Positions 45,110 through 64,000 of a DNA stretch of 64,000 bases are shown here, piece after piece (the stretch's first letter is position 1; the number at the start of each line of letters is the position of its first letter). The stretch lies in the IMG/VR virus record IMGVR_UViG_3300032562_000004, positions 124,001 to 188,000 of that record, one strand, 5' to 3'. A program made the position numbers and the translations under genes. Below the pieces are notes generated by a model that ran no database searches, was not told the origin of the DNA, and saw only the letters and a program-made list of their open reading frames with translations.

Positions 45110-45187
45110 TGGAGGAACGGGTCGGATTCGAACCGACGACTTTACAGTTTTGCAGACTGTTGCTTTGGGCCACTCAGCCACCGTTCC
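45110..45187 (-). tRNA. tRNA-Cys(GCA)
   Basis: Loop CTGCAAA, U73. Confidence 0.92.
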
Positions 45188-45196
45188 GTTATTGTT

Positions 45197-45281
45197 TGGT
45201 GGGTGGTCATGGAGTCGAACCAAGTATGCCAGAGGCGTCTGATTTACAGTCAGGTGCGGTCGCCAGTGCCGCTCACCACCC
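45197..45281 (-). tRNA. tRNA-Tyr(GTA)
   Basis: Loop CTGTAAA, long variable arm. Confidence 0.92.
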
Positions 45282-49097: not shown

Positions 49098-49106
49098 AAC
49101 AATTCT

Positions 49107-49310
49107 TTACAGCGGAAGAATATTTGATGCTTGCTTGCCTTTAGGGCCTGCCACTACATCGAATGTTACCGCTTGATTCTCTTTTAAACTCTTAAAACCA
49201 TTTGTGCTAATTGCGGAAAAATGTGCAAACAATTCCTCACCACCAGCATCGGGGGTAATAAATCCAAACCCTTTTGCATCATTAAACCACTTTACTTTAC
49301 CTGTTGCCAT
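49107..49310 (-). CDS. cspA: Cold-shock protein
   Basis: [18 protein letters not shown]...FAHFSAI...[10 protein letters not shown]. Confidence 0.95.
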
Positions 49311-49596: not shown

Positions 49597-49672
49597 TGGT
49601 GGTCCGGGTAGGACTTGCACCCACACTCCCCGAATTATGAGTTCGACGCTTTACTTTTTAAGCTACCGGGCC
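49597..49672 (-). tRNA. tRNA anticodon CAT, Ile2-like body
   Basis: GGCCC acceptor, loop CTCATAA, A73. Confidence 0.82.
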
Positions 49673-50077: not shown

Positions 50078-50365
50078 TCAAGGATATACTTTTTCGCCTT
50101 GCTTGAGTAACACTACGCTAAACTTATCAGTTTTGAATTGTGTGTTGAGTTTTTTGGCAAGATTGATTGCGTGACCTGGATTACTAAAACTTACTTTTTT
50201 ATATTTAGGTCCAGGGTACTGAACTAATAAATTAGAAGTTTTAAGATTAACTGGTTTATTATCAAAGTAAACGGCCCATACTCCTTCCGAAGCAAGTACT
50301 TGCTCGGTTTTGTATGTTTGCTTGTTTGTAAGCTCAGCTAAAATGGTTGGCTTGGGGCGACTCAC
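50078..50365 (-). CDS. Hypothetical phage protein
   Basis: MSRPKPTIL...GPKYKKVSFSNPGHA.NLAKKLN. Confidence 0.65.
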   Translation of the reverse strand: MSRPKPTILAELTNKQTYKTEQVLASEGVWAVYFDNKPVNLKTSNLLVQYPGPKYKKVSFSNPGHAINLAKKLNTQFKTDKFSVVLLKQGEKVYP

Positions 50366-50964
50366 TTAGAATTCCTTTTGAATAGTTCTTTTCGTGCTTC
50401 AGATATTTTTTTACAAGTTTCTGGAGAACGCTTTTTACCTTTGTGGAGCAACGATATTTTTTGTTTGAATTCCTCACTTCGTGGAACCATTATTTGTTTA
50501 GCTCTAGCATCTTTTATTTTTTGTTTTGTTTCGTCACTATGCTTTTTTCCTAACATAGTAGGCGCTTGTTTTGCTCTAGCAGTTCGAATCTTTTCTTTAC
50601 TAGACTCTGTATGTCTATAGTTTTTACTATTTTCTCTAATTTTTTGTCTAGTGGACTCTTTTACAGTACCGTAACTACCTCCCATTAATCCATCTTCGGG
50701 TTTAATGTTAGCCCATTCTGCTGACTCGACAATTTTGTTTTCTGTAGAAAATTTTAAAGCGTATTCGACTAATGTTTCTTTATTATCGAATAGCTGACAC
50801 CAAACGGTAGTAACATCTAGACCGTGTTTATTAAGATGTGCCCGCCAGTGTACGCCAGATCCTAAATATTTGTTAGGATCCCGTATAGTTTTTCCAAAGT
50901 ATTTTAGACCGGTAGTATTATGTTGCTTAATGTACAACCAGGTAGGTTTAAACGGTTTCGACAT
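50362..50964 (-). CDS. GIY-YIG homing endonuclease with NUMOD3 repeats
   Basis: LYIKQHNTTGLKYFGKT..DP..YLGSG..W; GKKHSDETKQKI. Confidence 0.88.
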   Translation of the reverse strand: MSKPFKPTWLYIKQHNTTGLKYFGKTIRDPNKYLGSGVHWRAHLNKHGLDVTTVWCQLFDNKETLVEYALKFSTENKIVESAEWANIKPEDGLMGGSYGTVKESTRQKIRENSKNYRHTESSKEKIRTARAKQAPTMLGKKHSDETKQKIKDARAKQIMVPRSEEFKQKISLLHKGKKRSPETCKKISEARKELFKRNSK

Positions 50965-51215: not shown

Positions 51216-51586
51216 TGTTCTCTCTTTAAAAAGTTAGCTAGCTTAGGTGGTTCCCATCCCAATGGTTTAAGAATTTTACCATCTTCACGACGGCGTACTT
51301 TGCCCAGTTGACGGTCAATTTTGGCAAAGTTAGTAGCCATTACCTCACGCCAAGCACCTTCACCATCTGCGCCCATCGAATTGATTGCTCCGATAGTAAC
51401 GACAATAATATCGATTAAAGCATCAAGAGTTTCAACTTGATTTTTATTAGCAATAGCTACTTGTAGCTCGTCGTATTCTTCTGTAATCAATTTGGAGTAA
51501 AGTCTAAACTGATCATCATTCATGCCTGAGATAGTCTGCTCGCAAGCTGTCATAAATTTTGCTGAATCCTTAAACGGGTTTGTCAT
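51212..51586 (-). CDS. MazG-like / PRA-PH nucleotide pyrophosphohydrolase (start at MTNPFKD)
   Basis: LITEEYDEL...LDALIDI...EVMATNFAKI...RREDGKILKP.GW. Confidence 0.82.
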   Translation of the reverse strand: MTNPFKDSAKFMTACEQTISGMNDDQFRLYSKLITEEYDELQVAIANKNQVETLDALIDIIVVTIGAINSMGADGEGAWREVMATNFAKIDRQLGKVRRREDGKILKPLGWEPPKLANFLKREH

Positions 51587-52203
51587 ACTTTTTCCTTTTT
51601 CTTTAATTGTGCGTTGCGTCTTGCTTCGGACCAAGGCTTACCTTTATGCTGTGATCCATAAATCTTTTTTCTCTCTTCTTCTGTAAGAGAACTTCTATGT
51701 TGTAATGCCTTTTCTTGCATCACTACTTTTGTATCTTCTGAATGTTCTTTATCTCTAAACGGATTATTTTCCTTCATCCATTCTCTGTGTTTTTCTTTTC
51801 TTCTCTTTGCTTCTTCTTTATCCTGTTGTATCTCTTCGTAAGTCTTGCCTTTGTTTTTACCTGGCTTACCTCTGCTGGCATTGCCTATTTTAGTTTTTGC
51901 TTCTTCGGTATGACTAAACGGACCACCATCGCCTGCTTCTGGTTTTAAGTTAGCCCACTCTGGACTATCTACTACCTGCCATAAGTCACTGTAGTACAGG
52001 CCCCAGGCTCTTATTTCTTCATTATCTTTACACTCTTTTAATATTTCTGTATCAACATCATTGCCGTGTTTCTCGATATGAGCTGACCAACGCTTACCAG
52101 AACCTTTGTAAGTGTACGGATCTTGATTAGTCTTACCTAAATATTTTAATCCGGTTTTACGATGAGTTTTAATGTACAAGTAAATCATATTGTACTTAGT
52201 CAT
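51583..52203 (-). CDS. GIY-YIG homing endonuclease with NUMOD3 repeats
   Basis: IYLYIKTHRKTGLKYLGKT..DPYTYKGSG. Confidence 0.88.
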   Translation of the reverse strand: MTKYNMIYLYIKTHRKTGLKYLGKTNQDPYTYKGSGKRWSAHIEKHGNDVDTEILKECKDNEEIRAWGLYYSDLWQVVDSPEWANLKPEAGDGGPFSHTEEAKTKIGNASRGKPGKNKGKTYEEIQQDKEEAKRRKEKHREWMKENNPFRDKEHSEDTKVVMQEKALQHRSSLTEEERKKIYGSQHKGKPWSEARRNAQLKKKEKV

Positions 52204-53409: not shown

Positions 53410-54150
53410 ATGACTATTTACACGCTTTACATTAAGACGCATAAGAAAACAGGACTAAAATATTTAGGTCAAACTCATTACGATCCCTATGAATACAAAG
53501 GTTCGGGGATTGATTGGAAAAAACATATTAAACAGTATGGAGACGATATTACTACTCAAGTTATTTATTCCGGAAAAAATCGTAATGAAATGTCGTCCTT
53601 GGGCAGATATTACAGCAACCTATACCGCATTACAACTTCTGTGGATGATTTTGGCAACAGAATTTGGGCTAACAGAACTATAGAAAACGGTGGAGGCGGA
53701 TGGAACATAGGTAAAACATACTCTACAGAAGAACGAAAAAAGTTTGGGCATACTAAGCATAAGGGTTCTAAACGAACAGATAAACAAAAACAAAAAATGA
53801 AGGATAATCACGCAGATTTTTCTGGTAGCAATAATCCTAACTATGGCAAAAAAGCAAAAGATTCAACACTTACAAAAATGAGAGTCTCAAAAGTAAGAGT
53901 ATGTCGCATAGTTGATCGCAAAGAAATGTCTGTAAACGAACTTACTGGCTGGATTAAGCGAGGCTGTAATCTAAAAGACAACTATCGACATGATCCTACT
54001 ATCTATTCATTTACTAACCTAATAACTAACGAAACTATTACTGCTACTAAACGAGAAATGATTGAACGATACAATCTAGATCAAAGTGCTATGAGTAGAG
54101 TATTAACCAGAAAGTTAAAATCTACTAAGGGATGGTCTTTAACTTTGTAG
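53410..54150 (+). CDS. GIY-YIG homing endonuclease, inverted
   Basis: TIYTLYIKTHKKTGLKYLGQT..DPY.YKGSG; GSNNPNYGK. Confidence 0.88.
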   Translation: MTIYTLYIKTHKKTGLKYLGQTHYDPYEYKGSGIDWKKHIKQYGDDITTQVIYSGKNRNEMSSLGRYYSNLYRITTSVDDFGNRIWANRTIENGGGGWNIGKTYSTEERKKFGHTKHKGSKRTDKQKQKMKDNHADFSGSNNPNYGKKAKDSTLTKMRVSKVRVCRIVDRKEMSVNELTGWIKRGCNLKDNYRHDPTIYSFTNLITNETITATKREMIERYNLDQSAMSRVLTRKLKSTKGWSLTL

Positions 54151-55140
54151 TGATCCAGTGTAGTGCTTATTAAGCCAATCACCAAATGTTGCTGCGTTTT
54201 CGCTTACCTTTGTAAGTTCGTAACGCCCACAAAATTTAAGGAAGTGACTACCAACTTGTCCTACATCCTTGTGACTAATTTGTTCCTTAATAGTATCATC
54301 TACTACTTCTTTAACATCATCTGGTTGCGCTGTTAAATCTACTAATGCTACATTACGCTGATAATCGTCCAACACACGATGTTCTACACCATCTGGATCC
54401 GTCCAGCGTTGTAGCATCATATTGTTCCAATTATATCCCTTTTTGTCCTTGTCAGCGAATGCCTCCACAAGGCCAACCTTGTTTTTAGTGCCCTTTGTTC
54501 TGACACCGGGAAATGCCGAAAAGACATTGTCGCTCGAATCGCCGCGCATACATTTCTCAAAAAGTAACCACTGTGGATCCGGTATTGTTTTTGGTTCTTT
54601 AGTTTTCTTGTCGATGACTGGTCTACCTTTGGCATCAAAGATTCCTTCTATAGTATGTAATTCGTCGGTAATTCCGTTATACTGCTTGACATTTTGTGCT
54701 AATAATTGAACAAAGTCAGTATCACTGCTGATAATAACGTGTTCATCTTGTGGATGTAATGCGATCCAACGAGCTATAATATCATCCCCTTCTGCTGTTG
54801 GGCAACGGATAACACTACAGTTTGTTTTCTCTGACAAGTATTTAGTCAAGGAATCATAGGTTTCCCAGAACATCTTATCTTCTTCTTGTTCTGCTTCTGT
54901 AAGCGCAGCTCTAGATACAGCACGATTAGCCTTATATGGTTTGTAGAAGTCTTTGCGCCAACTGCGCCCTTCTAAAGCAAATACCACATGATCCGCCTCA
55001 AATCGACGAGCCATTTTGTTAGCGGCCATTAATGTTACATGGAGGGCAAATCCTACCTTTTCCCAAGTATCACTAGCACGAAAGGCTCCATGTCTAGCAC
55101 GAAAGAAAAGATTAGCGGTATCTATAAGAACATATTTCAT
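54139..55140 (-). CDS. 5'-3' exonuclease / T4 RNase H-like flap endonuclease
   Basis: LIDTANLFFRA, WRKDFY.PYKANR, EGDD.IA, SSDTDFVQL, GDSSDNV..PGV. Confidence 0.9.
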   Translation of the reverse strand: MKYVLIDTANLFFRARHGAFRASDTWEKVGFALHVTLMAANKMARRFEADHVVFALEGRSWRKDFYKPYKANRAVSRAALTEAEQEEDKMFWETYDSLTKYLSEKTNCSVIRCPTAEGDDIIARWIALHPQDEHVIISSDTDFVQLLAQNVKQYNGITDELHTIEGIFDAKGRPVIDKKTKEPKTIPDPQWLLFEKCMRGDSSDNVFSAFPGVRTKGTKNKVGLVEAFADKDKKGYNWNNMMLQRWTDPDGVEHRVLDDYQRNVALVDLTAQPDDVKEVVDDTIKEQISHKDVGQVGSHFLKFCGRYELTKVSENAATFGDWLNKHYTGSLQS

Positions 55141-55171: not shown

Positions 55172-55714
55172 TCAAACGAAATTGTTGGTAATAATGTAAT
55201 TTAGGAGTAAACGGTTCCAAAAAGAATGCCCGTCTTTACCAAAATGCTTAGAATTTGGGGATACCGTTTCGATATTGGCATTACGAATTTTATCTTCGTA
55301 AGTATCTGATATAAAGCTATTGTTCCAATCGTGTTGGATGTTAAAAGATTGGCTACTGTTAAAAAATATATGTTTAATATTTTGGTTGGCTAATTCCAAA
55401 TGAAATTGCCAAATTTTTCCTTCATCTTCAGCAGTAGCAGGCCATTGGATAATAACTAAAACATCCTGCTTTTTCTCGTCTAACCATTTTTTTGTTGCGG
55501 CTATAATATCATCGGTGGTATTATCAACATACGCTTCGCAATGAAAACTATAACGAAGGGCTAGACTTAACATCTTGCCCCAACTGATTGCTATATTATC
55601 AGGATGCGGTAGTTGGCCTAAATGAGCTATTCTTGCGTCATCGCCGGCAACAATATATTGATTTACAGCTTCGGCGGCTGTGGTGTGACTATCACCGTTT
55701 ACATATAATATCAT
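55172..55714 (-). CDS. SGNH-like hypothetical protein
   Basis: LYVNGDSHT; HFGKDGH. Confidence 0.55.
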   Translation of the reverse strand: MILYVNGDSHTTAAEAVNQYIVAGDDARIAHLGQLPHPDNIAISWGKMLSLALRYSFHCEAYVDNTTDDIIAATKKWLDEKKQDVLVIIQWPATAEDEGKIWQFHLELANQNIKHIFFNSSQSFNIQHDWNNSFISDTYEDKIRNANIETVSPNSKHFGKDGHSFWNRLLLNYIITNNFV

Positions 55715-56184
55715 TGTTGTTTTAAGAGTTTAAAAGTTTCAGCTTCGACTACACGTCTGCGTAAACTACTACTTGAAAACGAATGGTCACGATCGTTAAA
55801 AATACATTCGATACCTCGTCGATAACATTCACTCTTTCCAGTAAATTCTTTATCCTCATACTCAATACCCAATACACGAACATCCAAAGGCAGTATTAGA
55901 AGCAAATCAACTAAGTCTTGTTCTGTTTGATAAACAACAACTTCGTCTACATAGCGACAAGCGGCTAATTGTATTTGCCGTTCAACAATACTTTGTACAG
56001 GTTTGTTTTTAGTATCTCGGTCAATAGTAGGATCTGTTTGCAATCCAGCAATTAAGTAATCACAATGGTTCTTAGCTTCGGATAGCATAGCAATATGCCC
56101 AGCGTGTAGCATATCAAAAGTACTAAAGGTAATACCAATCTTTTTACCTTCTTCTGTAAGTCTGCGAATGTGATTAAAAATCAA
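55711..56184 (-). CDS. Cytidylyltransferase (TagD-like)
   Basis: STFDMLHAGH, YVDEV, RDH.FSSSSLR. Confidence 0.85.
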   Translation of the reverse strand: MIFNHIRRLTEEGKKIGITFSTFDMLHAGHIAMLSEAKNHCDYLIAGLQTDPTIDRDTKNKPVQSIVERQIQLAACRYVDEVVVYQTEQDLVDLLLILPLDVRVLGIEYEDKEFTGKSECYRRGIECIFNDRDHSFSSSSLRRRVVEAETFKLLKQQ

Positions 56185-56546
56185 CTTACTTCACTCCTGC
56201 CATCGCCAACATCGCGACTTTTAACTACTCGCGGCGACATTGCTTCGTATTGTTCTGCTGTTTCTAATACTACATTACGACATACTGCGGTAAACCAACG
56301 ATCAATAATATCTGCGTCTGTATCTTTAGGATCCATCATATAGCCATGGCGAACCAAATCGGCAATCATTTTGTCATTCCAATCAAATTCAAATGCGCCT
56401 GAATTAATATCGTTAGGATCTATGTCCATACTTAATACTTCAAAGTATGCTTCGCCTTTTTCAGTAGCAACTTGTTTAGCTGACTTAGCTTGTTGTTGCG
56501 CTACAGCCGCAATTGGCTTCTTTTTAAAAAAATCAAATATTCCCAT
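56181..56546 (-). CDS. Hypothetical phage protein
   Basis: GAFEFDWNDK...WFTAVCRNV. Confidence 0.6.
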   Translation of the reverse strand: MGIFDFFKKKPIAAVAQQQAKSAKQVATEKGEAYFEVLSMDIDPNDINSGAFEFDWNDKMIADLVRHGYMMDPKDTDADIIDRWFTAVCRNVVLETAEQYEAMSPRVVKSRDVGDGRSEVS

Positions 56547-57649
56547 TACTGATCCTTAAACAAATTTATTTCTTCCCATGGCAAATCTTTTTTGCCAAAG
56601 TGACCATAGTTAGTAGTCTTACTGTATATAGGTCTAAACAGCTTAAAGCGATTAATAATACCTAACGGAGTTAAATCTACATTATTATAAATCCACTCTG
56701 TTAACGCACGACTATCACCGTCTGACTCTATATAAAAACTCATAGGTTGTGCTACCCCAATAGCATAACTAATTTGTACAGTAGCCCAGTTAGCACGACC
56801 AGCGGCAACAATATTCTTAGCCAAATAGCGAGCCATGTAAGCGGCGCTACGGTCTACCTTAGTAGGATCCTTGCCACTAAACGCACCACCGCCGTGTGGG
56901 CTATATCCACCGTATGTGTCTACAATAATCTTACGACCTGTTAATCCTGTGTCACCATCAGGACCACCTACTACAAAACGCCCTGTTGGGTTAATATAAA
57001 ATTCTGTCTTTTCATCTACAAATTCTGTAGGTAATATATTACGAATAATATTGCCAACGTCTTTACGAACAGTTTCGATATCAACATCGGCATTATGTTG
57101 TGTAGAACAAACTACTTTAGCAATACGAATAGGTTTGGCATCATCGCTGTATTCAAAAGTAACTTGACTCTTAGCATCTGGTCCAAGATAGTTAAGTACA
57201 CCTTGTTTACGAACTTGTGTTAACCCTTCTACAATTCTATGACTCCAGTAAATTGCCGAAGGCATAAAGTTTTCTGTTTCGTTACAAGCATATCCAAACA
57301 TTAATCCTTGGTCGCCTGCGCCAAAGTTGTCTGTGCCTAACGCAATATCTGCGGACTGGCCATGTAGCAAGTTAATAATTTTAACAGTACGCCAATCAAA
57401 TCCTGACTGCTCGTAACCAATATCTTTGATGACTCGACGAATAGCTGATTCTACTTCTTCTGAATGTAATACACCTTTATATTCTCCAGCAACAATTACT
57501 GTATCTGTAGTTACCAATGTTTCACAAGCACAACGAAGACTAGTGTCTTCTTTACTCATTACTAAATCTAAAATAGCATCACTAATAGCATCTGCTACTT
57601 TGTCTGGATGTCCTTCTGATACTGATTCGCTTGTGAATAGATAGCTCAT
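56546..57649 (-). CDS. metK: S-adenosylmethionine synthetase (start at MSYLFTSES)
   Basis: FTSESVSEGHPDK, GAGDQGLMFGYA, GLTGRKIIVDTYGG, GGAFSGKDPTKVDRS. Confidence 0.97.
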   Translation of the reverse strand: MSYLFTSESVSEGHPDKVADAISDAILDLVMSKEDTSLRCACETLVTTDTVIVAGEYKGVLHSEEVESAIRRVIKDIGYEQSGFDWRTVKIINLLHGQSADIALGTDNFGAGDQGLMFGYACNETENFMPSAIYWSHRIVEGLTQVRKQGVLNYLGPDAKSQVTFEYSDDAKPIRIAKVVCSTQHNADVDIETVRKDVGNIIRNILPTEFVDEKTEFYINPTGRFVVGGPDGDTGLTGRKIIVDTYGGYSPHGGGAFSGKDPTKVDRSAAYMARYLAKNIVAAGRANWATVQISYAIGVAQPMSFYIESDGDSRALTEWIYNNVDLTPLGIINRFKLFRPIYSKTTNYGHFGKKDLPWEEINLFKDQ

Positions 57650-57891
57650 TAATTTCCTTTTAATTTCCATATAAGATGTTCGGTACTGCTATGCCATTTG
57701 TATTGATACGCTGGTTCGCCTGGCCCGGACCATCCAGCTACGCCACGATAGGCATATTCTAGCCAGATTAACTTATTACTTAGCGCACATTTATGGGGTA
57801 GCCAAGAAAATTTGAGTTCCCAAAATGCCTTTCTATAAAAAGGATCGATTAAATCAGGTATAGGCATACCATGAAATCCTTGTGGATACAA
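57649..57891 (-). CDS. Hypothetical protein
   Basis: Tiled; FSWLPHKC. Confidence 0.45.
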   Translation of the reverse strand: MYPQGFHGMPIPDLIDPFYRKAFWELKFSWLPHKCALSNKLIWLEYAYRGVAGWSGPGEPAYQYKWHSSTEHLIWKLKGN

Positions 57892-58746
57892 TCAAGTACC
57901 CCAGTCGTTTTTCCAAAGAACCACTTGAAGTCTATCACTATAGCGTAAGCCATTTGCCATAGCTAGTTCTGCTACTCGACGATTATTCAAAGTATAAACA
58001 CTTTCAACCCCGCCAACTGGCATTAAGTAAATTGGGCCTTTAAACCCAGCCGCTTGATAAATTTGCGATACTGCTAGTGCTTCTTCGGCATCTTCTTCTG
58101 TAGAGATTACAAATTTTAAATAAGTGTATCCAACTTCTTGATATTCGCAAACTACTTCAGGCTTAATAGCATCTTCACGCAATTCACCAGAGCAACTTAA
58201 TTTAGCACTAACACTAAATGTAACTTGTTTAGGCTTGCCAACTCCATCTAATGACCAGTTAATCAAAAACTCTTTAAACTCTGGACTTAGCTTTTGAGTG
58301 CCATTCGTTTCAAAAGTAATTTCTCGTAAATTGGCCATCTTAGGATTGTTCAGCAAGTCTGGATAAGCACGTTGCCAACCTAACAAAGGTTCTCCGCCTG
58401 TGATAACCAAGTGCTCAGTGCCCCACTGACCAAATGGCAGAATCTCCATAATGCGATTAGCAATAGCATCTGACTCCATTAAAGGACTTAAATCTTTAAA
58501 GCGCGGATCCCAACTAGCATAGCTATCACATCCTGTACTTACTAATGGCAAGTCTTCATATTTGGTAAACATATGAGCAACTTCTGCTATTTCTTCTACT
58601 TCTGTGCTAAGTTGACCTTTGGGCATACCAAATCCAGCACAGCGGAAATTACAGCCGAAAGTTCTAAGGAATATACTGGGCACTCCCATATAGCGACCTT
58701 CGCCTTGAATACTATAAAATAGTTCTGCTACTTTTAATTTACTCAC
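57892..58746 (-). CDS. queE: 7-carboxy-7-deazaguanine synthase (radical SAM)
   Basis: ELFYSIQGEG...FLRTFGCNFRC...CDS, VITGGEPLL, ETNGT, YSDRLQV.LW. Confidence 0.85.
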   Translation of the reverse strand: MSKLKVAELFYSIQGEGRYMGVPSIFLRTFGCNFRCAGFGMPKGQLSTEVEEIAEVAHMFTKYEDLPLVSTGCDSYASWDPRFKDLSPLMESDAIANRIMEILPFGQWGTEHLVITGGEPLLGWQRAYPDLLNNPKMANLREITFETNGTQKLSPEFKEFLINWSLDGVGKPKQVTFSVSAKLSCSGELREDAIKPEVVCEYQEVGYTYLKFVISTEEDAEEALAVSQIYQAAGFKGPIYLMPVGGVESVYTLNNRRVAELAMANGLRYSDRLQVVLWKNDWGT

Positions 58747-59044
58747 CGAATTCCTCTCTCATCATTTGATCATGTTCATTTTCTTCTTTAGCACCTTTCC
58801 GTGCTTTTTGTTCTTGATAGCCGCGACTACCGTCTCCTTTGCCTTTTACTCTGCGCCCACACTCCGTACATTCGTGAAATCCTTGTACAAACTCTTTTCC
58901 ACTATCAAATGTTATTACTTCTGTGCCTTCGATTGTGAATTTTTTGTAACACTGGTTAAAGGTACAAACCACTTTCATAGTTTCAGGATCTATAAAAGAT
59001 ACGTCTACTTTTTTCTTTGACAATTTACTCATTTCTTCCACCAC
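58739..59044 (-). CDS. Small Cys-containing protein
   Basis: CTFNQC...HECTECG. Confidence 0.45.
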   Translation of the reverse strand: MVEEMSKLSKKKVDVSFIDPETMKVVCTFNQCYKKFTIEGTEVITFDSGKEFVQGFHECTECGRRVKGKGDGSRGYQEQKARKGAKEENEHDQMMREEFGE

Positions 59045-59598
59045 CCTTCATAAGGAAAATTAACCCATCGAGGGTCTTCGTTTTTATTAATCTCCATACC
59101 AGCATAGTTAATAGTTAATTCACTCTTACTTGGTAAGTTATCGATTAGTACTGCTACTCGTACATTGTTGCCCCAAACTTGTTCCCAAACTTCTGTAGCC
59201 TGCGGTAAGCAACTTGATTGCCAATCTTGTTTAATCCAGTTTAGAGTAGCACCTGTATCATTAATATCATCAACGATAAGAATATTTTTGCGTAGCTTTT
59301 TCTTAGAATATGATTCGTGATCTTTGCGGATTTCTAAGTTGACATACCCAAAGGCATCACTTGCCATTCCGCAATCACTTACACAATCTTGATCATCCCG
59401 TAATGATACTTTAAGTGTTTGCATTGGCACGTCTAGATATTGGGATATAAGAACAGCTGGAAGTAACCCGCCACGAGTAAGTCCTACAACATAATCGGGT
59501 TTCCAGCCGTCTTTCGTAATTTGACGTAGAATGTCTTGAGTTAAACATTCTACGTCTTTGTAAGTTAAATTAGTATGGTCCATACAAGTATTATACAC
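59029..59598 (-). CDS. Type I phosphoribosyltransferase (Gpt-like)
   Basis: VGLTRGGLLPA, ILIVDDINDTGAT, FPYEGWW. Confidence 0.85.
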   Translation of the reverse strand: MYNTCMDHTNLTYKDVECLTQDILRQITKDGWKPDYVVGLTRGGLLPAVLISQYLDVPMQTLKVSLRDDQDCVSDCGMASDAFGYVNLEIRKDHESYSKKKLRKNILIVDDINDTGATLNWIKQDWQSSCLPQATEVWEQVWGNNVRVAVLIDNLPSKSELTINYAGMEINKNEDPRWVNFPYEGWWKK

Positions 59599-59622
59599 AC
59601 TTGTATTTAGGTCGTCAAGCTA

Positions 59623-60516
59623 TTACGATAAAATTTGGCGAATACCTTCTTCAAACGACATAGGATTATAGTCAGGCATAATCGAACGAAGTTTGGTAAT
59701 ATCAGGACGGCGATTAGCAACAGAACCTGGCATACTTGGTAACTGTTCAAATACTGCGTCTGGATGACCTAATTCGGTAGCAATAACTTTAACAGCATCA
59801 CCAATTGAAATCTCGCGGTCATTGCCCACATTAACCAATTCACGAGTAGTGTTTTCGGCAACATAGATACTAGCACGGATAGCATCTGATACATGACAGA
59901 AGCTACGAGTTTCTTGTGCGCCGATTACAGAGAAAATACCGTTTTTAATCTTGTTAATTTGGTCACCTAAGAAATGACCTTGTTTACTGTTTTCACCATA
60001 TACATTAAAGTAACGGATCATAACATAAGGTAAGTCCGAATTAGCCAAATAGTTTTCACTAGTAATCTTAGCCAAACGATAACTCCAACGAGCATTGTGT
60101 ATATCTTTAATAAACACATCTGAATTCTCTGGAACTGGACTCGTAGGATCATCTGCTACAATTTCACTGCTCGAAGCATATACTAAGCTCTTAAGATTAG
60201 TACATTTACGAGCAAAATTGAAAATGTTTAAATCGCAAACAAAGTTATTTTCTAATACCTTGTTAGGCATTTTGTAAAAGTTAGTTGTACCGTTAATAGC
60301 ACCATAGTGATAAATGTAATCAAAATCAGTTGGCAATAATTCATCAAACAATACTGTGTTATTTAAGTCAGCGGCAACAAACTTATCACAATCAGGAATA
60401 CTTGAACTACGACTATGATTATCTAGTGCCCATACTTCATTGCCAGCGGCTTTAAGTTGTTTACAAAATTCTGTGCCTAGCAATCCGCTAGCGCCTGTAA
60501 TTAAAATTTTAGCCAT
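59623..60516 (-). CDS. NAD-dependent epimerase/dehydratase
   Basis: ITGASGLLG, YASSSE, YRLAK (YxxxK), RYFNVYG, TRSFCHVSD. Confidence 0.9.
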   Translation of the reverse strand: MAKILITGASGLLGTEFCKQLKAAGNEVWALDNHSRSSSIPDCDKFVAADLNNTVLFDELLPTDFDYIYHYGAINGTTNFYKMPNKVLENNFVCDLNIFNFARKCTNLKSLVYASSSEIVADDPTSPVPENSDVFIKDIHNARWSYRLAKITSENYLANSDLPYVMIRYFNVYGENSKQGHFLGDQINKIKNGIFSVIGAQETRSFCHVSDAIRASIYVAENTTRELVNVGNDREISIGDAVKVIATELGHPDAVFEQLPSMPGSVANRRPDITKLRSIMPDYNPMSFEEGIRQILS

Positions 60517-61285
60517 TTACAATTTTCTCATTATCTTTAATAGTTGCTTCAATCATAGCGAAGTCAAGTCCTAAGTTCTTAACTAAGTTAGCCCACGCAC
60601 TTGTATCTTTTGGCAAGCAATGTCCGCCAAAGCCACGCAAGTTTTCATTACACATCAAATATGCTGGATTAATACAATCACGCTTGGTAATAGCATTGTA
60701 AACATTATTATAATCTGCGCCTAATGCTTTACATACTTCATAAGCAATATTAGCAAAAATAATTTGTACAGAATGATTTACATTGTTGAAGTATTTGATA
60801 ACTTCTGCTTCTGCTGGCTTAACACAAGCAACATTTTGTGGCAAGTTACCATGGATAGCTTTAACAATAATATAATCTTCTTCGCGATTACTGCCAATTA
60901 CTAATAAATCATGATTGTACATAAAATCAGCTAACGCTGTTTTAGCACGAAGAAATTCTGGAACGGAGCAAATACGCAAGTTAGGGTATTGGGCAGATAG
61001 CTTATCGCAAGTACCAGGAACACAAGTACTTTTAAGTCCTACTAAACCTTTGTAGCCAGCGTCGTTTAATTCGCCAACTACCTTTTCTACAATACTTGTA
61101 TCGCAATCACCATTTGGCGCTTGGTTAGTAGGAACACAAATGAATACACATTCTGTATCTAATACATCATTAAGTGTTGATCCTTCGTATGCTGGATCAA
61201 AGAAACTCATTTGGTGACCCAAATGATTTAATCCTTCATAAACTGCTTTGCCTACTGTGCCTTTTCCTATTAAACCAATCTTCAT
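60509..61285 (-). CDS. UDP-glucose/GDP-mannose dehydrogenase family protein
   Basis: IGKGTVG, CVPT, PEFLRA, GFGGHCLPKD. Confidence 0.88.
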   Translation of the reverse strand: MKIGLIGKGTVGKAVYEGLNHLGHQMSFFDPAYEGSTLNDVLDTECVFICVPTNQAPNGDCDTSIVEKVVGELNDAGYKGLVGLKSTCVPGTCDKLSAQYPNLRICSVPEFLRAKTALADFMYNHDLLVIGSNREEDYIIVKAIHGNLPQNVACVKPAEAEVIKYFNNVNHSVQIIFANIAYEVCKALGADYNNVYNAITKRDCINPAYLMCNENLRGFGGHCLPKDTSAWANLVKNLGLDFAMIEATIKDNEKIVNG

Positions 61286-61882
61286 TCAATTCTCCTCTGG
61301 ATATTTCATATCAACTAGTTGATTACTCTGAGCTGACGCCATGCTTAATATTTCTTGTGCCACATCTTCGGGTTCTAAACATATAGCCGAAGTTTTCATA
61401 TCTATCATTTTAGTGCGTGTGCGTACTGGATTAATTAATCCTAATGTAACTTCACTGCCTTTAAAATACTCACAGGCACCTTGCCATACATTATATAGTG
61501 CTGCTTTACTGGCGGCGTATAAAATGTAGTCTTTGCGTCCTGACTTATACGCACTAGATCCAACCATAATAATCTTTACAGGTTTCTTAGTACCGTTACT
61601 AATGTAATGACGAATAATGGACCAATTCGATCCAATGTTTATATCAAATGTATTTGAATGTGTTTCGTTATTAGTTTTATCGAAATGACCTACACAATTT
61701 ACAATAACATCTGGATCATTACTTGATAACATTTCTTGTATTTTAATATCGCTATCTAAATAAACAAAATTTACTTGATTTTTGCTAATAGGTTTGACAA
61801 TATAGCCGGCTCGAGTGAAGGCTTCACAGGTAGCTTGACCGATGCCGCCATTAGATCCAAATATAACTGCTCGTTTAATCAT
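61286..61882 (-). CDS. Short-chain dehydrogenase/reductase
   Basis: FGSNGGIG, YAASK. Confidence 0.82.
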   Translation of the reverse strand: MIKRAVIFGSNGGIGQATCEAFTRAGYIVKPISKNQVNFVYLDSDIKIQEMLSSNDPDVIVNCVGHFDKTNNETHSNTFDINIGSNWSIIRHYISNGTKKPVKIIMVGSSAYKSGRKDYILYAASKAALYNVWQGACEYFKGSEVTLGLINPVRTRTKMIDMKTSAICLEPEDVAQEILSMASAQSNQLVDMKYPEEN

Positions 61883-62288
61883 GTTTTGGTAAAATAGAAT
61901 CTACACGGAATGTATCATTCTCGTAATCTTCGCCACCGCGTGGGCCTTCAGCAAAAGCAATAAACACACAGCCATCGCTACCAGCTTCCATACCGTGGAT
62001 CTCATTAGGTTCGCTAATAACCATATCCCCAGGACCGGCAGTGATTCCAACGGCTGGCTCATCACTATCAACAGGCTTAGAGTAATAGTGTAAAGTACCA
62101 GCTAACACATAGGTATACTGCGTAGTAAGTTTGTGATAATGATTAGCACGAATAGCACCAGGAGCGTTAGTAATAATACAAGCATGATTCATATTTGCTT
62201 TGTAAAAAATATCGGTAATCGAACCACGGTCGTCTGCGTGTTTGCCTAAACCTTCTTCTGTATTGTTATAAATGTTGTAATGTCTCAT
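61875..62288 (-). CDS. Cupin (NDP-sugar isomerase/epimerase-like)
   Basis: DDRGSI, RANHYHK, EPNEIHG. Confidence 0.75.
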   Translation of the reverse strand: MRHYNIYNNTEEGLGKHADDRGSITDIFYKANMNHACIITNAPGAIRANHYHKLTTQYTYVLAGTLHYYSKPVDSDEPAVGITAGPGDMVISEPNEIHGMEAGSDGCVFIAFAEGPRGGEDYENDTFRVDSILPKHD

Positions 62289-63514
62289 TGTGATATAAAC
62301 CTTGTGTTAGGGTTGATGCTTAATAGAGCTTTCTTTAGTGGCTCTCCGATATTCCAGCTTAGTACTAATGCGTATGGTTTTTCGTGTTTAGCAAACTCGT
62401 CATCGCTACGAATAGGAATACGAGTTAATGGTGTGTATTTGCCTTGTTTAAATTGACTAGCATCTGTAATACAAGTTAATACTGTTTTATCTAGTTTGTG
62501 CCAGTTTAACCAAGTATTAGCTTTGGCTGCCGCCCCAACACCAATAATAACAGCATCAGGTTCATCTGCTAAAATTTGATAAAAGTTAAGTAGCCACGCA
62601 TTGCGTTGCTTTTCAAACTTGTCTTGTAATTTGGTATAGAAAGTAGTATCAAACAAACCCATAGCAGTTTCGTTTTCGATAGCACCACGAACCAAGAATG
62701 GCATTCCGTTGTTAGTAGTATGTTTAGCAATAACTCTAATACTGCCGCCATGATAATCAACTATATCAAAATCTACAATATCTAAACCAACTTGCTGTAG
62801 CAAGTTCCAAGCACTCTTAATAGTAAAGTAAGAAATGTGTTCGTGATAAACCATATCTACGAATCGACCACTTTCAATCATACTTGCCCAGTACGGTAAC
62901 TCAAATACAAATATACCATCTTTATCTAATAACTGTGAAACTCCCGAAGCAAAGTTAACAGGATCGTTAGCATGATTGAATACATTGTTAGCTATAATTA
63001 CCGAAGCCTTGCCATGTTCTTCGGCAACTTCAACTGCTGTATCAATATTGAATAAAGCAGCTAATGAGTCGACTCCTTTTTCTTTGGCAATATCGCACAT
63101 AGTTTGGGAAGAATCGATCCCAAGTACTTTGGTATCTGTATCTTGAAATTGTTTAATTAAGTAAGCATCGTTACTACCAATCTCTACAACCAATCCCTCA
63201 GTGTTGTATTTGCTTTTGATAGTAGAAGCATATTCATCCCAGTGATCTCTGGCAGTTTTTGAATTTGACGATGTATAGCTATAACTGTATAAGTTATAAC
63301 GATCTTCGGCATCGCTAACGAATCCTAATTGGATTTGCCCTGAACTAGAATTTAAATGTAGTTGTAGTGGAAATACTGGTTCAGACATATGAAGCTGATC
63401 TTCAGCAATGAATGTATCAGCATAAGCGTGTTGCCCGAAGTCTAAAATTTTTGTAACAAACTCGCCTGTAATTAAACAGCGATCTAAGTGGGTGCTTTCA
63501 GTTATTTTACTCAT
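62285..63514 (-). CDS. NDP-hexose C-methyltransferase
   Basis: VEIGSNDA, ANNVFNHA, YHEHISYF, HGGSIR, GAAAKANT, GKYTP..RIPI, LSWN. Confidence 0.88.
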   Translation of the reverse strand: MSKITESTHLDRCLITGEFVTKILDFGQHAYADTFIAEDQLHMSEPVFPLQLHLNSSSGQIQLGFVSDAEDRYNLYSYSYTSSNSKTARDHWDEYASTIKSKYNTEGLVVEIGSNDAYLIKQFQDTDTKVLGIDSSQTMCDIAKEKGVDSLAALFNIDTAVEVAEEHGKASVIIANNVFNHANDPVNFASGVSQLLDKDGIFVFELPYWASMIESGRFVDMVYHEHISYFTIKSAWNLLQQVGLDIVDFDIVDYHGGSIRVIAKHTTNNGMPFLVRGAIENETAMGLFDTTFYTKLQDKFEKQRNAWLLNFYQILADEPDAVIIGVGAAAKANTWLNWHKLDKTVLTCITDASQFKQGKYTPLTRIPIRSDDEFAKHEKPYALVLSWNIGEPLKKALLSINPNTRFISQ

Positions 63515-64000
63515 TATCTTTTTACCGGAGTTTGTATCATTTGTTTATTAATATCATTCTTTTTAAGTTTTTCCCAAGGATCCTGTTGACCTAGTTTTAC
63601 ATTTTGCCAGAAAGAAAGGTCTTTACCTTTTGACACTAGATAAGAAGCAATCTTTTCAGCGTCAACTAATCTGCCATTGCCATATGAAGGATGATGGAAA
63701 TCTTTTGGACTACTAGGATTACCTTCTAATACCTCACGATTTTTAAATGTAAGGTCTGCGTTGCTACCAGTTAAGTCATGTCTATCGTGTGTAGCGTAAA
63801 TTTCTACAATTTCCATAATGTCAAGCATATAAGCAATTTGACTTAACTCAGCATCAATCATTTGATGACGTGAGAAGAATCCAAATAAGTCATACCATTC
63901 TTTAGGAACAATAGGGAAAATAGAATATGGATGTTCGCGATGAACATGGATTTTAAGTAGTTTGAATTCACCAGTATGATCAGTGATAATTTTATCCCAA
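63514..64000 (-). CDS. Probable glycosyltransferase, C-terminal part (5' end outside the window)
   Basis: Frame open to the window edge: WDKIITDHTGEF...HPYSIFPIVPKEW...DAELSQIAY...HDRHD. Confidence 0.5.
   Translation of the reverse strand, partial: WDKIITDHTGEFKLLKIHVHREHPYSIFPIVPKEWYDLFGFFSRHQMIDAELSQIAYMLDIMEIVEIYATHDRHDLTGSNADLTFKNREVLEGNPSSPKDFHHPSYGNGRLVDAEKIASYLVSKGKDLSFWQNVKLGQQDPWEKLKKNDINKQMIQTPVKR

What the first reader, a model, noticed from the sequence alone, without database searches (positions are those of the whole stretch)
55711..64000. MetK, QueE, PRT and a C-methyl-sugar pathway in one co-oriented cluster
The cluster has a probable glycosyltransferase, NDP-hexose C-methyltransferase, cupin, SDR, NDP-sugar dehydrogenase, epimerase, Gpt-like PRT, QueE, MetK and a cytidylyltransferase. 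C-methyltransferases make branched sugars, QueE serves 7-deazaguanine synthesis, and both need SAM (established). The phage may build a branched sugar for DNA, virion or host-surface glycosylation, possibly on a deazaguanine base (inference). FolE, QueD, QueC and DpdA are not in the window.
Basis: partly seen in the sequence, partly recalled or inferred. Interest (0 to 1): 0.6.

Follow-up and report, generated by a model that had tools for sequence, protein, structure and literature searches.

The report
Phage deazaguanine genes plus branched-sugar cassette
This stretch of a 236-kb lake-water phage is half of a larger block that very likely replaces guanine in the phage's DNA with 7-deazaguanine, and a separately mobile six-gene cassette for an unusual methyl-branched sugar, whose target is unknown, has been inserted into it.

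Summary

The window cuts the system in half. Within 10 kb beyond its end lie MazG, QueD, FolE, a DpdL (signature LxxxHRHxF), a GT-B glycosyltransferase (X351) and a 560-aa enzyme with a tRNA-guanine-transglycosylase fold and motifs (Z 19), here called DpdA-like. QueC is absent. This is the gene set of Cellulophaga phage phiST, whose dG is fully replaced by 2'-deoxy-7-deazaguanine. It is syntenic with Pseudomonas phage PA5oct, whose DNA carries a modified G.

The sugar genes (GT2, 3-C-methyltransferase, cupin, SDR, a UDP-sugar dehydrogenase lacking its UDP-binding domain, UXS-like SDR) form one mobile cassette. Many relatives have the deazaguanine genes without it. Some phages, including a 96%-complete one, have it without any deazaguanine genes. 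So comparative data do not support "branched sugar on deazaguanine"; the acceptor is unknown.

The gene that does track the deazaguanine genes is X351, adjacent to DpdL in several distant phage lineages. PRT also usually travels with the module; I infer it recycles guanine excised from DNA. MetK and the nucleotidyltransferase are accessory insertions.

No chemistry was tested. Interest is moderate to high.

The parts
63514..64000 (-). C-terminal 161 codons of a 275-aa GT2-like (GT-A) glycosyltransferase, GT275. Its first 114 codons lie beyond the window (L001 1514-2341). First gene of the sugar cassette.
   Evidence: PHROG glycosyltransferase E 1e-5. Atlas feature score 0.99 to viral GT2 clusters carrying PF00535. 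Syntenic with the cassette in relatives. dN/dS about 0.05-0.11.
62285..63514 (-). NDP-4-keto-sugar 3-C-methyltransferase (TylC3/MtmC/TcaB9 family), 409 aa, SAM-dependent.
   Evidence: Pfam Methyltransf_13 + _23 + _14. Full-length match to D-mycarose 3-C-methyltransferase MtmC (E 7e-56) and to TcaB9. 48 related loci.
61875..62288 (-). Small cupin, 137 aa; candidate sugar epimerase/isomerase.
   Evidence: Cupin_2/Cupin_1. Weak match to the cupin domain of Cap5F/WbcJ-type enzymes. Always follows the methyltransferase.
61286..61882 (-). Short classical SDR, 198 aa; candidate ketoreductase.
   Evidence: adh_short E 8e-14. Conserved in the cassette.
60509..61285 (-). 'Mini' nucleotide-sugar dehydrogenase, 258 aa. 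Has the NAD domain and the catalytic-Cys central domain but no C-terminal UDP-binding domain.
   Evidence: UDPG_MGDP_dh_N + central domains only. Aligns to residues 76-315 of the 444-aa UGDH 3VTF. GxGxxG kept in all 35 relatives aligned at that position and the GGxCxPKD Cys in 40/40, lengths 244-258. dN/dS about 0.05-0.07. Not a pseudogene.
59623..60516 (-). Extended SDR, 297 aa, closest to UDP-glucuronate decarboxylase (UXS) and UDP-GlcA 4-epimerase. Last gene of the cassette.
   Evidence: Epimerase family E 4e-39. PDB hits UXS1 and UGA epimerase. Sequence shows an SSSE motif and YxxxK.
59029..59598 (-). Type I purine phosphoribosyltransferase (Gpt/HGPRT-like), 189 aa.
   Evidence: Pribosyltran. 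HGPRT/XGPRT hits. PRPP loop and the Asp that contacts purine N7 conserved in 53 of 57 relatives. Linked to deazaguanine genes in three phage lineages.
58739..59044 (-). 101-aa ORF of unknown function, Cys-rich (possible zinc ribbon). Found only in the closest relatives.
   Evidence: No family hits. Present only in the closest relatives (99-100% identical cassette, L007-L011).
57892..58746 (-). QueE (7-carboxy-7-deazaguanine synthase), 284 aa, with a roughly 36-residue insert between the second and third cluster cysteines.
   Evidence: Five QueE NCBIfam models at E 1e-10 to 1e-13, below cut-offs. 47% identity to BUCT-ZZ01 QueE; 188 phage records hit. SxQGEG motif, three Cys and TGGEP conserved in 72-73 of 73.
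57649..57891 (-). 80-aa ORF of unknown function.
   Evidence: No family hits. Patchy in relatives.
56546..57670 (-). MetK, S-adenosylmethionine synthetase, 374 aa, complete.
   Evidence: All three S-AdoMet_synt domains, E 1e-33 to 1e-58. Present only in this clade and in loci L031-33 and L036-38.
56181..56546 (-). 121-aa conserved ORF of unknown function. Core gene between QueE and the exonuclease in all relatives.
   Evidence: No family hits. Present in nearly all related loci.
55711..56184 (-). Nucleotidyltransferase, 157 aa, of the cytidylyl/adenylyltransferase superfamily (RfaE domain II / TagD / ECT-like).
   Evidence: CTP_transf_like. rfaE_dom_II E 1e-21 over the full length, G3P cytidylyltransferase E 3e-16. 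PDB hits ECT and TagD. Subclade-specific.
55172..55714 (-). 180-aa ORF of unknown function. N-terminal GDSH suggests an SGNH-type hydrolase (a lead only).
   Evidence: No family hits. Sequence read.
54139..55140 (-). 5'-3' exonuclease (FEN/RNase H-like). Conserved downstream boundary of the variable block.
   Evidence: 5_3_exonuc_N E 6e-19. Present at the same position in all related loci and in PA5oct and Phosso.

Best explanation
The region is the window-truncated downstream part of a roughly 23-kb, single-strand block between DNA polymerase B and a 5'-3' exonuclease. The block lies in a freshwater T4-like jumbo phage and holds two separable functions.

(1) A 7-deazaguanine DNA-modification system of the phiST type.
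- FolE, QueD and QueE turn GTP into 7-carboxy-7-deazaguanine (CDG).
- With no QueC, the DpdL homologue is predicted to decarboxylate CDG to 7-deazaguanine.
- A 560-aa TGT-fold enzyme (DpdA-like) exchanges this base for guanine in phage DNA, protecting it from host nucleases.
- I infer that PRT returns the excised guanine (about 85,000 G per genome copy) to GMP, and so to GTP, the pathway's own precursor.
- I infer that MetK tops up SAM for QueE and the methyltransferase. MazG is an accessory dNTP pyrophosphohydrolase.
- A GT4-like GT-B glycosyltransferase (X351) belongs to this module. Its acceptor is unknown.

(2) A six-gene cassette that moves as a unit between phages. It was inserted between QueD/MazG and PRT/QueE in one subclade.
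- My reading is that it takes a host nucleotide-glucose-type sugar and oxidises C6 (mini-dehydrogenase).
- The UXS-like SDR then decarboxylates it to a 4-keto-pentose, and the methyltransferase methylates C3.
- The cupin and short SDR epimerise and reduce it, and the GT2 enzyme transfers the resulting 3-C-methyl-branched sugar.
- The acceptor is not deazaguanine-dependent. I think a phage or host protein or glycan is more likely than DNA.

Shown: gene identities, folds, motifs, synteny, phyletic independence, purifying selection. Inferred: every chemical step, the DNA target, the roles of PRT and MetK, the sugar structure and its acceptor.
For: Deazaguanine genes:
- QueE is in the window.
- Beyond the window lie MazG, QueD, FolE and DpdL, which is 35% identical to phiST CGPG_00067 with LxxxHRHxF in 29/29 relatives.
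- QueC is absent from the complete genome.
- The 560-aa protein carries DSGG(F/Y)Q, LD(I/V)P, MGG and SFDC motifs. Its model matches only TGTs in the PDB (Foldseek top 50; VIA Z 19.2, 305 residues aligned). Among viral models it matches phage DpdA/TGT proteins, including Vibrio phage nt-1.
- phiST, with the same gene set, has 100% dG replaced by dDG (PMC10516641).
- PA5oct gp168-gp167-gp166...gp162...gp159 is syntenic. Its DNA resists G-site restriction enzymes and is sensed as G-modified (PMC12191111).

Independence of the cassette. The cassette is 53-79% identical between phages whose PolB is only 27% identical.

Sugar chemistry: MtmC/TcaB9 match; UXS-like SSSE/YxxxK; UGDH catalytic motifs; GT2; no sugar-1-P nucleotidyltransferase PF00483 in the genome, so the starting sugar comes from the host.

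PRT: linkage and canonical purine-PRT residues. G count.
Against: - No chemistry was measured.
- DpdL's decarboxylase activity has never been demonstrated. Heterologous tests failed (PMC10516641).
- The transglycosylase has no sequence-level match to Pfam TGT, to PDB chains or to a DpdA3 profile. Its substrate, DNA or tRNA, is inferred only from relatives.
- QueD has CxxxHGY instead of the canonical CxxxHGH.
- The dehydrogenase lacks the UDP-binding domain, so its substrate may not be a UDP-sugar and the proposed sugar route may be wrong.
- PRT persists in relatives that lack the deazaguanine genes, and is missing near the module in others. Its role may be general purine salvage.
- Physical interleaving of the two modules could still reflect a functional link in this particular clade.
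Confidence: 0.65

Rival explanations
1. One reading: the cassette's branched sugar is put on the phage DNA, on the deazaguanine base itself, giving a glycosylated purine.
For: - The cassette sits inside the deazaguanine gene cluster, between QueD/MazG and PRT/QueE, among replication genes.
- In an unrelated phage the cassette is also next to PolB and UvsX.
- Two glycosyltransferases are present.
- GT4-type enzymes are known to N-glycosylate free 7-deazapurine bases in huimycin biosynthesis (bioRxiv 10.64898/2026.04.15.718813).
Against: - The cassette occurs without any deazaguanine genes and the reverse.
- 7-deazaguanine has no hydroxyl or amine at C7.
- No dCMP/dUMP hydroxymethylase (PF00303) is present to create a classical sugar acceptor.
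- Known DNA glucosyltransferases are GT-B (my own knowledge), while the cassette's transferase is GT-A/GT2-like.
Confidence: 0.12
2. A pre-replicative route. PRT condenses the deazaguanine base (CDG or DG) with PRPP, as TubE does in tubercidin biosynthesis. The nucleotide is converted to the dNTP and incorporated by the phage polymerase, while MazG removes dGTP. The TGT-like enzyme is secondary.
For: - PRT is linked to FolE/QueE in this lineage (order FolE-PRT-QueE in most of the 28 related loci), in cyanophage BUCT-ZZ01 (QueE-PRT-x-QueD-FolE) and is present in phiST.
- MazG is adjacent here and in phiST.
- TubE uses PRPP plus CDG (PMC6112128).
- DpdA3 and DpdL activity has not been reconstituted.
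Against: - A strongly conserved TGT-fold enzyme with intact catalytic motifs is present (dN/dS about 0.05).
- PRT keeps the Asp that contacts N7 of normal purines.
- PRT is retained in relatives with no deazaguanine genes and is absent near the module in others.
- No guanylate kinase (PF00625) is encoded.
Confidence: 0.12
3. The target is tRNA, not DNA. The TGT-like enzyme inserts a 7-deazaguanine into the phage's own or host tRNAs.
For: - The same window carries 26 tRNA genes, including Asp, Asn, His and Tyr, the four queuosine-bearing species.
- The enzyme's closest solved folds are tRNA-guanine transglycosylases.
Against: - The DpdL-type, QueC-less gene set is known only from DNA modification (dDG in phiST).
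- The syntenic cultured relative PA5oct has restriction-resistant, G-modified DNA.
- Viral structural neighbours include nt-1 DpdA2, which was shown to modify DNA.
Confidence: 0.05
4. The block makes a soluble 7-deazapurine nucleoside or glycoside (tubercidin/huimycin-like). Sugar tailoring is done by the cassette and X351, and the product acts as a toxin or signal during infection.
For: The gene content (FolE, QueD, QueE, PRT, decarboxylase-like T-fold protein, GT4-like GT, methyltransferase, sugar enzymes, MetK) resembles actinomycete deazapurine clusters.
Against: - A DNA/RNA-type transglycosylase is an integral, highly conserved member of the module.
- The cassette is phyletically independent of the module.
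- No exporter or resistance gene was seen in the block.
Confidence: 0.05

Closest known systems
Cellulophaga phage phiST 2'-deoxy-7-deazaguanine (dDG) system: FolE, QueD, QueE, DpdL, DpdA3, MazG-like (Hutinet et al. 2023, PMC10516641)
   Same: FolE, QueD and QueE are present without QueC. DpdL has the LxxxHRHxF signature (35% identity). MazG is adjacent and a type I PRT is encoded in the genome (34% identity).
   Different: - The transglycosylase here is 560 aa, with no sequence match to the 259-aa DpdA3. Structurally it is nearer nt-1 DpdA2.
- This phage adds a GT-B glycosyltransferase next to DpdL, a sugar cassette, MetK and two oxidoreductases that phiST lacks.
Pseudomonas jumbo phage PA5oct (Wroclawvirus) block gp168-gp159
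   Same: Same order: PolB, clamp-like protein, TGT-like gp168 (32% identity), GT-B gp167 (43%), small gp166, QueE gp162, exonuclease gp159. Its DNA is reported to carry a modified G (PMC12191111).
   Different: PA5oct has no C-methyl sugar cassette and no close match (E below 1e-5) to the PRT or the C-methyltransferase in the phage collection. MetK was not searched. The chemical identity of its modified G was not determined in that paper.
NDP-sugar 3-C-methyl branching pathways of actinomycete antibiotics (TylC3, MtmC, TcaB9)
   Same: Same three-part methyltransferase architecture and a full-length alignment. It is accompanied by SDR reductases and a cupin, as in deoxysugar pathways.
   Different: - There is no 4,6-dehydratase with the TDE motif and no nucleotidyltransferase of the RmlA type.
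- The 4-keto sugar would instead come from a dehydrogenase plus a UXS-like decarboxylase, giving a pentose.
- The dehydrogenase lacks its UDP-binding domain.
- The setting is a lytic phage.
T4-type DNA glycosylation (hydroxymethylcytosine plus alpha/beta-glucosyltransferases)
   Same: Phage-encoded glycosyltransferases sit among early and replication genes. X351 has a GT-B fold like the T4 enzymes (the T4 fold is from my own knowledge; the X351 fold is).
   Different: There is no hydroxymethylase, and X351's nearest folds are GT4 enzymes such as BshA, MshA and glycogen synthase.
Tubercidin and huimycin deazapurine clusters (TubE PRT; HuiG GT4-type N-glycosyltransferase)
   Same: CDG-based chemistry without QueC, combined with a PRT and a decarboxylation (tubercidin). 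A GT4-type enzyme glycosylates a 7-deazapurine (huimycin).
   Different: Those pathways make free metabolites and have no TGT-fold transglycosylase.

Membership tests
Phage 7-deazaguanine DNA modification system, dDG (phiST) type | GTP-to-CDG enzymes FolE, QueD and QueE | tested here: met
   FolE Pfam E 2e-39 and NCBIfam E 3e-39. QueD/PTPS E 3e-13, with the variant motif CxxxHGY conserved in 25/25. QueE: five QueE models hit, 47% identity to a phage QueE, motifs conserved.
Phage 7-deazaguanine DNA modification system, dDG (phiST) type | Absence of QueC | tested here: met
   No PF06508 match in the 235,812-bp record rated 100% complete; the control genomes were positive.
Phage 7-deazaguanine DNA modification system, dDG (phiST) type | DpdL: QueD-like T-fold protein with LxxxHRHxF replacing CxxxHGH | tested here: met
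   35% identity to phiST CGPG_00067. phrog_17812 E 4e-31. Motif L-x3-H-R-H-x-F in 28 of 29 relatives; the Leu, both His and the Phe are invariant.
Phage 7-deazaguanine DNA modification system, dDG (phiST) type | DpdA-family (TGT-superfamily) transglycosylase | tested here: met
   Met at the level of fold and motifs. VIA Z 19.2 over 305 residues to TGTs. All top-50 Foldseek PDB hits are TGTs. Viral neighbours are annotated TGT/DpdA. DSGGFQ and SFDC motifs are conserved. Pfam TGT did not match.
DpdA3 subfamily | Sequence similarity to phiST CGPG_00065 and the Campylobacter phage homologues | tested here: not met
   A four-sequence DpdA3 HMM gives no hit better than E 0.9 in the whole genome. The only link is a weak structural match to phiST M4SLA5, E 1e-2. 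I therefore do not file the enzyme under DpdA3.
Phage 7-deazaguanine DNA modification system, dDG (phiST) type | 7-deazaguanine actually present in virion DNA | not testable with these tools
   Indirect evidence only: phiST dDG and PA5oct restriction resistance.
NDP-hexose 3-C-methyltransferase (TylC3/TcaB9/MtmC) | N-terminal zinc-binding domain + class I SAM methyltransferase fold + C-terminal Methyltransf_14 domain, alignable end to end | tested here: met
   Methyltransf_13 (below cut-off, 27.6 vs 31.3 bits), Methyltransf_23 and Methyltransf_14 (97 bits). Residues 21-393 align to MtmC 22-392, E 7e-56. The substrate was not tested.
UDP-glucose/GDP-mannose dehydrogenase family | NAD-binding GxGxxG and catalytic Cys in GGxCxPKD | tested here: met
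   Both motifs were read in the sequence and are conserved in relatives. NDP-sugDHase E 9e-40, below the cut-off.
UDP-glucose/GDP-mannose dehydrogenase family | C-terminal UDP-binding domain (UDPG_MGDP_dh_C) | tested here: not met
   The protein ends at the equivalent of residue 315 of 444 in 3VTF. There is no Pfam C-domain hit. The same short length is seen in all relatives. It is best called a truncated variant of the family, substrate unknown.
UDP-glucuronate decarboxylase (UXS/ArnA-type extended SDR) | GxxGxxG, a Ser/Thr-Glu pair before the catalytic YxxxK, and best similarity to UXS | tested here: inconclusive
   GASGLLG, SSSE and YRLAK were read in the sequence. Best PDB hits include UXS1 (E 6e-17) but also 4-epimerases. 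All NCBIfam hits are far below their cut-offs.
6-oxopurine phosphoribosyltransferase (Gpt/Hpt) | PRPP-binding loop and the Asp that contacts purine N7 | tested here: met
   VDDxxDTG is conserved, the last Asp in 53/57. HGPRT/XGPRT are the best PDB and NCBIfam hits but fall below cut-offs. Base specificity was not tested.
S-adenosylmethionine synthetase (MetK) | All three S-AdoMet synthetase domains in order | tested here: met
   N-terminal, central and C-terminal domains at E 3e-33, 2e-43 and 6e-58.
GT4-like GT-B glycosyltransferase (X351, outside the window) | Two-Rossmann GT-B fold with an E-x7-E motif and basic phosphate-binding residues | tested here: met
   Model pLDDT 95.5. Foldseek hits BshA, MshA, glycogen synthase and PimA at E 1e-8 to 1e-10. 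E259, E267, R207 and K212 are nearly invariant in 54 homologues.
T4-type hydroxymethylpyrimidine glycosylation | dCMP/dUMP hydroxymethylase (thymidylate synthase family) | tested here: not met
   No PF00303 match in the genome.

The most novel reading that the evidence does not exclude
In this widespread freshwater phage lineage and in PA5oct-like phages, the deazaguanine is further glycosylated. The GT-B enzyme that always accompanies DpdL would do this, and in this subclade the cassette's C-methyl-branched sugar might be used as well. The result would be the first glycosylated purine in any DNA. The enzyme may act by N-glycosylation, as HuiG does on free deazapurines.
Probability: 0.15. Interest if true: 0.85.

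Novelty: new variant of a known kind. Interest (0 to 1): 0.6.

Why it matters
- 7-deazaguanine DNA is a known phage counter-defence. The DpdL branch of it is known chemically from one phage group only, and its enzymes have not been reconstituted.
- This window shows the branch is carried by a very abundant group of lake phages. Thousands of near-full-length homologues of the transglycosylase and of the linked glycosyltransferase exist in metagenomes.
- It defines a long TGT-fold enzyme that sequence profiles miss.
- It points to two unexplained but conserved partners, a GT-B glycosyltransferase and a purine PRT. Both can be tested directly in the cultured relative PA5oct, whose modified G is still chemically undefined.
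- Separately, it identifies a horizontally mobile phage cassette for a branched sugar, built around a dehydrogenase that has lost its nucleotide-binding domain. This is an enzymological oddity with no assigned acceptor.

Tried and rejected
- Megablast of the region against 50,697 phage records found nothing. No cultured phage has a close C-methyltransferase.
- X351 as the missing DpdA: rejected. It has no similarity to DpdA3 and its fold is GT-B.
- Pfam TGT, PADLOC and PDB sequence or profile searches all failed to recognise the 560-aa enzyme. Only motifs and the predicted structure did.
- A DpdA3 HMM found nothing in this genome, nor in the fetched ACP17, Phosso and BUCT-ZZ01 loci. Which ACP17 gene Hutinet et al. 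call dpdA could not be checked because their supplements are not held.
- 'Truncated dehydrogenase = pseudogene': rejected on conservation and dN/dS.
- 'DUF2061 + CTP_transf' protein as a second sugar-activating enzyme: rejected. It is NMN-adenylyltransferase-like.
- Hydroxymethylase, guanylate kinase and RmlA-type nucleotidyltransferase were not found.
- The promoter and terminator scan was no better than shuffled sequence and says nothing about transcription units.
- Only genetic code 11 was used.

Full report
**Setting.** The window is bases 124001-188000 of a 235,812-bp IMG/VR virus record that CheckV rates 100% complete. The same DNA is held, nearly word for word, by many lake-water and freshwater metagenome runs. 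The closest cultured relatives by DNA polymerase B are rhizobial jumbo phages Phosso and Atu_ph07, at 47-50% identity. Everything described here is on the minus strand.

- From 64000 down to 55172 there are fourteen ORFs with spacings of -22 to +24 nt, most of them overlapping.
- Pfam, NCBIfam, PHROG, PDB-sequence and Atlas searches give, in transcription order:
  - a GT2-like glycosyltransferase, 275 aa; only its last 161 codons are in the window
  - a 3-C-methyltransferase of the TylC3/MtmC/TcaB9 family (MtmC E 7e-56)
  - a 137-aa cupin
  - a 198-aa classical SDR
  - a 258-aa member of the UDP-glucose/GDP-mannose dehydrogenase family
  - a 297-aa extended SDR, nearest UDP-glucuronate decarboxylase and UDP-GlcA 4-epimerase
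  - a type I purine PRT
  - a 101-aa unknown
  - QueE
  - an 80-aa unknown
  - a complete MetK
  - a 121-aa unknown
  - an RfaE-domain-II/TagD-like nucleotidyltransferase
  - a 180-aa unknown
  - then a 5'-3' exonuclease
- QueE scores below NCBIfam's cut-offs. It is nevertheless 47% identical to the annotated QueE of Synechococcus phage BUCT-ZZ01 and hits 188 phage records. It keeps SxQGEG, three cluster cysteines and TGGEP in 72-73 of 73 relatives. A roughly 36-residue insert sits between the second and third cysteine.

**What lies just beyond the window.** I fetched genome 186001-204000 as L001. Continuing upstream on the same strand:

| Gene | L001 coordinates | Note |
|---|---|---|
| MazG | 2401-2685 | |
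| QueD | 2666-3169 | |
| FolE | 3508-4308 | |
| 132-aa unknown | 4305-4703 | |
| X351 | 4746-5801 | 351 aa |
| DpdL homologue | 6029-6484 | |
| small unknowns | | |
| zinc-ADH-like oxidoreductase | 7886-8776 | |
| GFO/IDH/MocA oxidoreductase | 8773-9684 | |
| 560-aa protein | 9681-11363 | |
| NMN-adenylyltransferase-like protein | | |
| sliding-clamp homologue | 11944-12666 | 240 aa, 34% identical to the Phosso protein annotated as sliding clamp |
| DNA polymerase B | 13634-16294 | |

- QueC (PF06508) is absent from the whole genome.
- DpdL is 35% identical to phiST CGPG_00067. It carries the published DpdL signature LxxxHRHxF, seen in 28 of 29 relatives with the Leu, both His and the Phe invariant.

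**The transglycosylase.**
- The 560-aa protein has no Pfam, PADLOC or PDB-sequence match.
- An alignment of 33 homologues shows invariant GDSGGFQ, LDIP, MGG and SFDC segments. From my own knowledge, these correspond to the catalytic and substrate-binding motifs of tRNA-guanine transglycosylase.
- An AlphaFold model (pLDDT 78) hits only TGTs among solved structures: Foldseek top 50, and VIA-align Z 19.2, rmsd 4.2 Å, 305 residues.
- Among viral models it hits annotated phage TGT/DpdA proteins. These include Vibrio phage nt-1, whose DpdA2 modifies DNA, and weakly phiST's DpdA3.
- A small DpdA3 HMM finds nothing in the genome. I therefore call it DpdA-like and do not assign a subfamily.

**Link to known biology.**
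- phiST encodes FolE, QueD, QueE, DpdL, DpdA3 and a MazG-like protein, has no QueC, and has all dG replaced by 2'-deoxy-7-deazaguanine (PMC10516641).
- Pseudomonas phage PA5oct has the same order as here: PolB, clamp-like protein, gp168 (32% identical to the 560-aa enzyme), gp167 (43% identical to X351), gp166, QueE gp162, exonuclease gp159.
- PA5oct DNA resists several G-site restriction enzymes and is attacked by END nucleases that sense modified G (PMC12191111).
- This is the main reason to think the target here is DNA rather than the 26 tRNAs encoded in the same window.

**X351.**
- Family scans left this protein open, so I used the large searches.
- It has more than 8000 close homologues in metagenomes, and 1183 cluster representatives at E <= 1e-3.
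- The model (pLDDT 95.5) is a GT-B fold nearest GT4 enzymes: BshA, MshA, PimA, glycogen synthase, tetrahydrobiopterin glucosyltransferase. The E-x7-E pair and the basic residues are nearly invariant.
- It lies next to DpdL here and in Phosso, ACP17, BUCT-ZZ01 and PA5oct. It is lost together with the deazaguanine genes in relatives that lack them.
- Its acceptor is unknown. A GT4-type enzyme, HuiG, N-glycosylates a free 7-deazapurine in huimycin biosynthesis. A glycosylated deazaguanine is therefore chemically conceivable, and that is my 'novel case'.

**The sugar cassette is a separate, mobile unit.**
- Forty-eight IMG/VR loci carry the methyltransferase at 61-100% identity. Most of them keep the full order GT2, methyltransferase, cupin, SDR, mini-dehydrogenase, UXS-like SDR; a few lack the SDR or the last three genes, and those of the distant lineage lack a detectable GT275.
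- Loci L020-22, L025-26 and L045 have the cassette plus PRT beside PolB and the clamp, but none of FolE, QueD, QueE, DpdL, X351 or the transglycosylase.
- L030, L040, L041, L050, L052 and L054 have the cassette in a phage whose PolB is only 27-29% identical. L052's record is 161 kb and 96% complete, and has neither FolE nor the transglycosylase.
- There the cassette sits between another GT2 plus two DUF7796-like proteins on one side and PolB/UvsX on the other.
- Conversely, 28 QueE-selected related loci of 12 kb or more carry the deazaguanine genes without any cassette. Where enough flank is held, their order is transglycosylase, u172, (u110), DpdL, X351, FolE, PRT, QueE, u121, exonuclease, with PRT before FolE in some and not detected in three.
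- Cassette proteins are 53-79% identical between phages whose PolB is 27% identical, which indicates horizontal transfer as a block.
- All cassette genes are under purifying selection.

**Sugar chemistry (inference).**
- The dehydrogenase keeps GxGxxG and the catalytic GGxCxPKD cysteine. It stops at the equivalent of residue 315 of a 444-residue UGDH and so lacks the UDP-binding domain. This short form is conserved everywhere, with dN/dS about 0.05-0.07.
- The next enzyme has the Ser-Glu/YxxxK arrangement and best hits typical of UDP-GlcA decarboxylases.
- A dehydrogenase followed by a decarboxylase would give an NDP-4-keto-pentose, the kind of substrate that 3-C-methyltransferases use.
- The cupin and the short SDR could then epimerise and reduce it, and the GT2 enzyme could transfer it.
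- The genome has no RmlA-type nucleotidyltransferase, so the starting sugar is probably host-derived.
- The RfaE/TagD-like nucleotidyltransferase at 55711-56184 does not co-vary with the cassette.

**PRT, MetK and MazG.**
- PRT sits between FolE and QueE in most relatives. It is adjacent to QueE in BUCT-ZZ01 and present in phiST.
- It also remains in relatives without deazaguanine genes and is missing near the module in others.
- It keeps the PRPP loop and the Asp that contacts N7 of ordinary purines, in 53 of 57 sequences.
- Full replacement would release about 85,000 guanines per genome copy. My best inference is therefore that PRT recycles this guanine to GMP and on to GTP, the substrate of FolE.
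- The alternative, that it ribosylates the deazaguanine as TubE does (PMC6112128), is kept as a rival.
- MetK occurs only in this clade and in a few others. A SAM-supply role for QueE and the methyltransferase is plausible but accessory.

**Verdict.**
- The gene list is right. The deazaguanine idea is right and can be made much stronger.
- The specific link between the branched sugar and the base is not supported by comparative data.
- The finding is a new variant of a known kind of system, with two open questions: what X351 glycosylates, and what the cassette's sugar decorates.

Noticed in passing
window 48836-49142 (-) and 19607-19990 (-): Two permuted (two-piece) tmRNA genes in one phage. 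One is of the betaproteobacterial type (Rfam beta_tmRNA 117.6 bits). The other scores 104 bits on tmRNA_permuted and just at threshold on alpha_tmRNA, with a canonical-looking tag ANDESYALAA. They may hint at the host and at manipulation of ribosome rescue.
   Followed up: partly
window 38960-45281 and 49597-49672 (-): An array of 26 tRNA genes covering 19 of the 20 amino acids (no tRNA-Phe was called), including Asp, Asn, His and Tyr, the queuosine-bearing species. This matters for the tRNA-target rival.
   Followed up: partly
window 50362-50964 (-), 51583-52203 (-), 53410-54150 (+): Three NUMOD3-containing ORFs (homing-endonuclease-like) lie just downstream of the cluster. One is on the opposite strand, between the exonuclease and the tRNA region.
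   Followed up: no
window 60509-61285: The UDP-sugar dehydrogenase homologue has lost its whole UDP-binding domain but is one of the most conserved genes of the cassette. The substrate of such a 'mini-UGDH' is unknown.
   Followed up: partly
L001 2666-3169 (QueD) and window 57892-58746 (QueE): QueD has CxxxHGY instead of the canonical CxxxHGH (25/25 relatives). QueE has a roughly 36-residue insert between the second and third iron-sulfur cysteines, shared with BUCT-ZZ01 and PA5oct.
   Followed up: partly
L001 7886-9684: A zinc-ADH-like and a GFO/IDH/MocA oxidoreductase pair lies between the transglycosylase and u172. It is present only in some deazaguanine-bearing relatives and never seen without them. 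Its function is unknown; it might further modify the base or a sugar donor.
   Followed up: no
genome 44098-44496 (-), outside the window (L137): A second GT2-family glycosyltransferase (PF00535, E 5e-12) lies elsewhere in the genome. Its neighbours were not examined.
   Followed up: no
window 55172-55714: The 180-aa ORF starts with a GDSH motif, reminiscent of SGNH/GDSL hydrolases. No profile confirms this.
   Followed up: no
window about 14000-18000: GC skew changes sign sharply, from +0.15 to -0.18. This is consistent with a switch of coding strand or a replication landmark.
   Followed up: no
L006 (Acidovorax phage ACP17) 7718-8992 and L002 (BUCT-ZZ01) 14778-17364: Large unannotated proteins sit where the transglycosylase would be expected, next to X351/DpdL in ACP17 and BUCT-ZZ01. 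They match neither the 560-aa profile nor DpdA3. One BUCT-ZZ01 protein is a second GT-B.
   Followed up: partly
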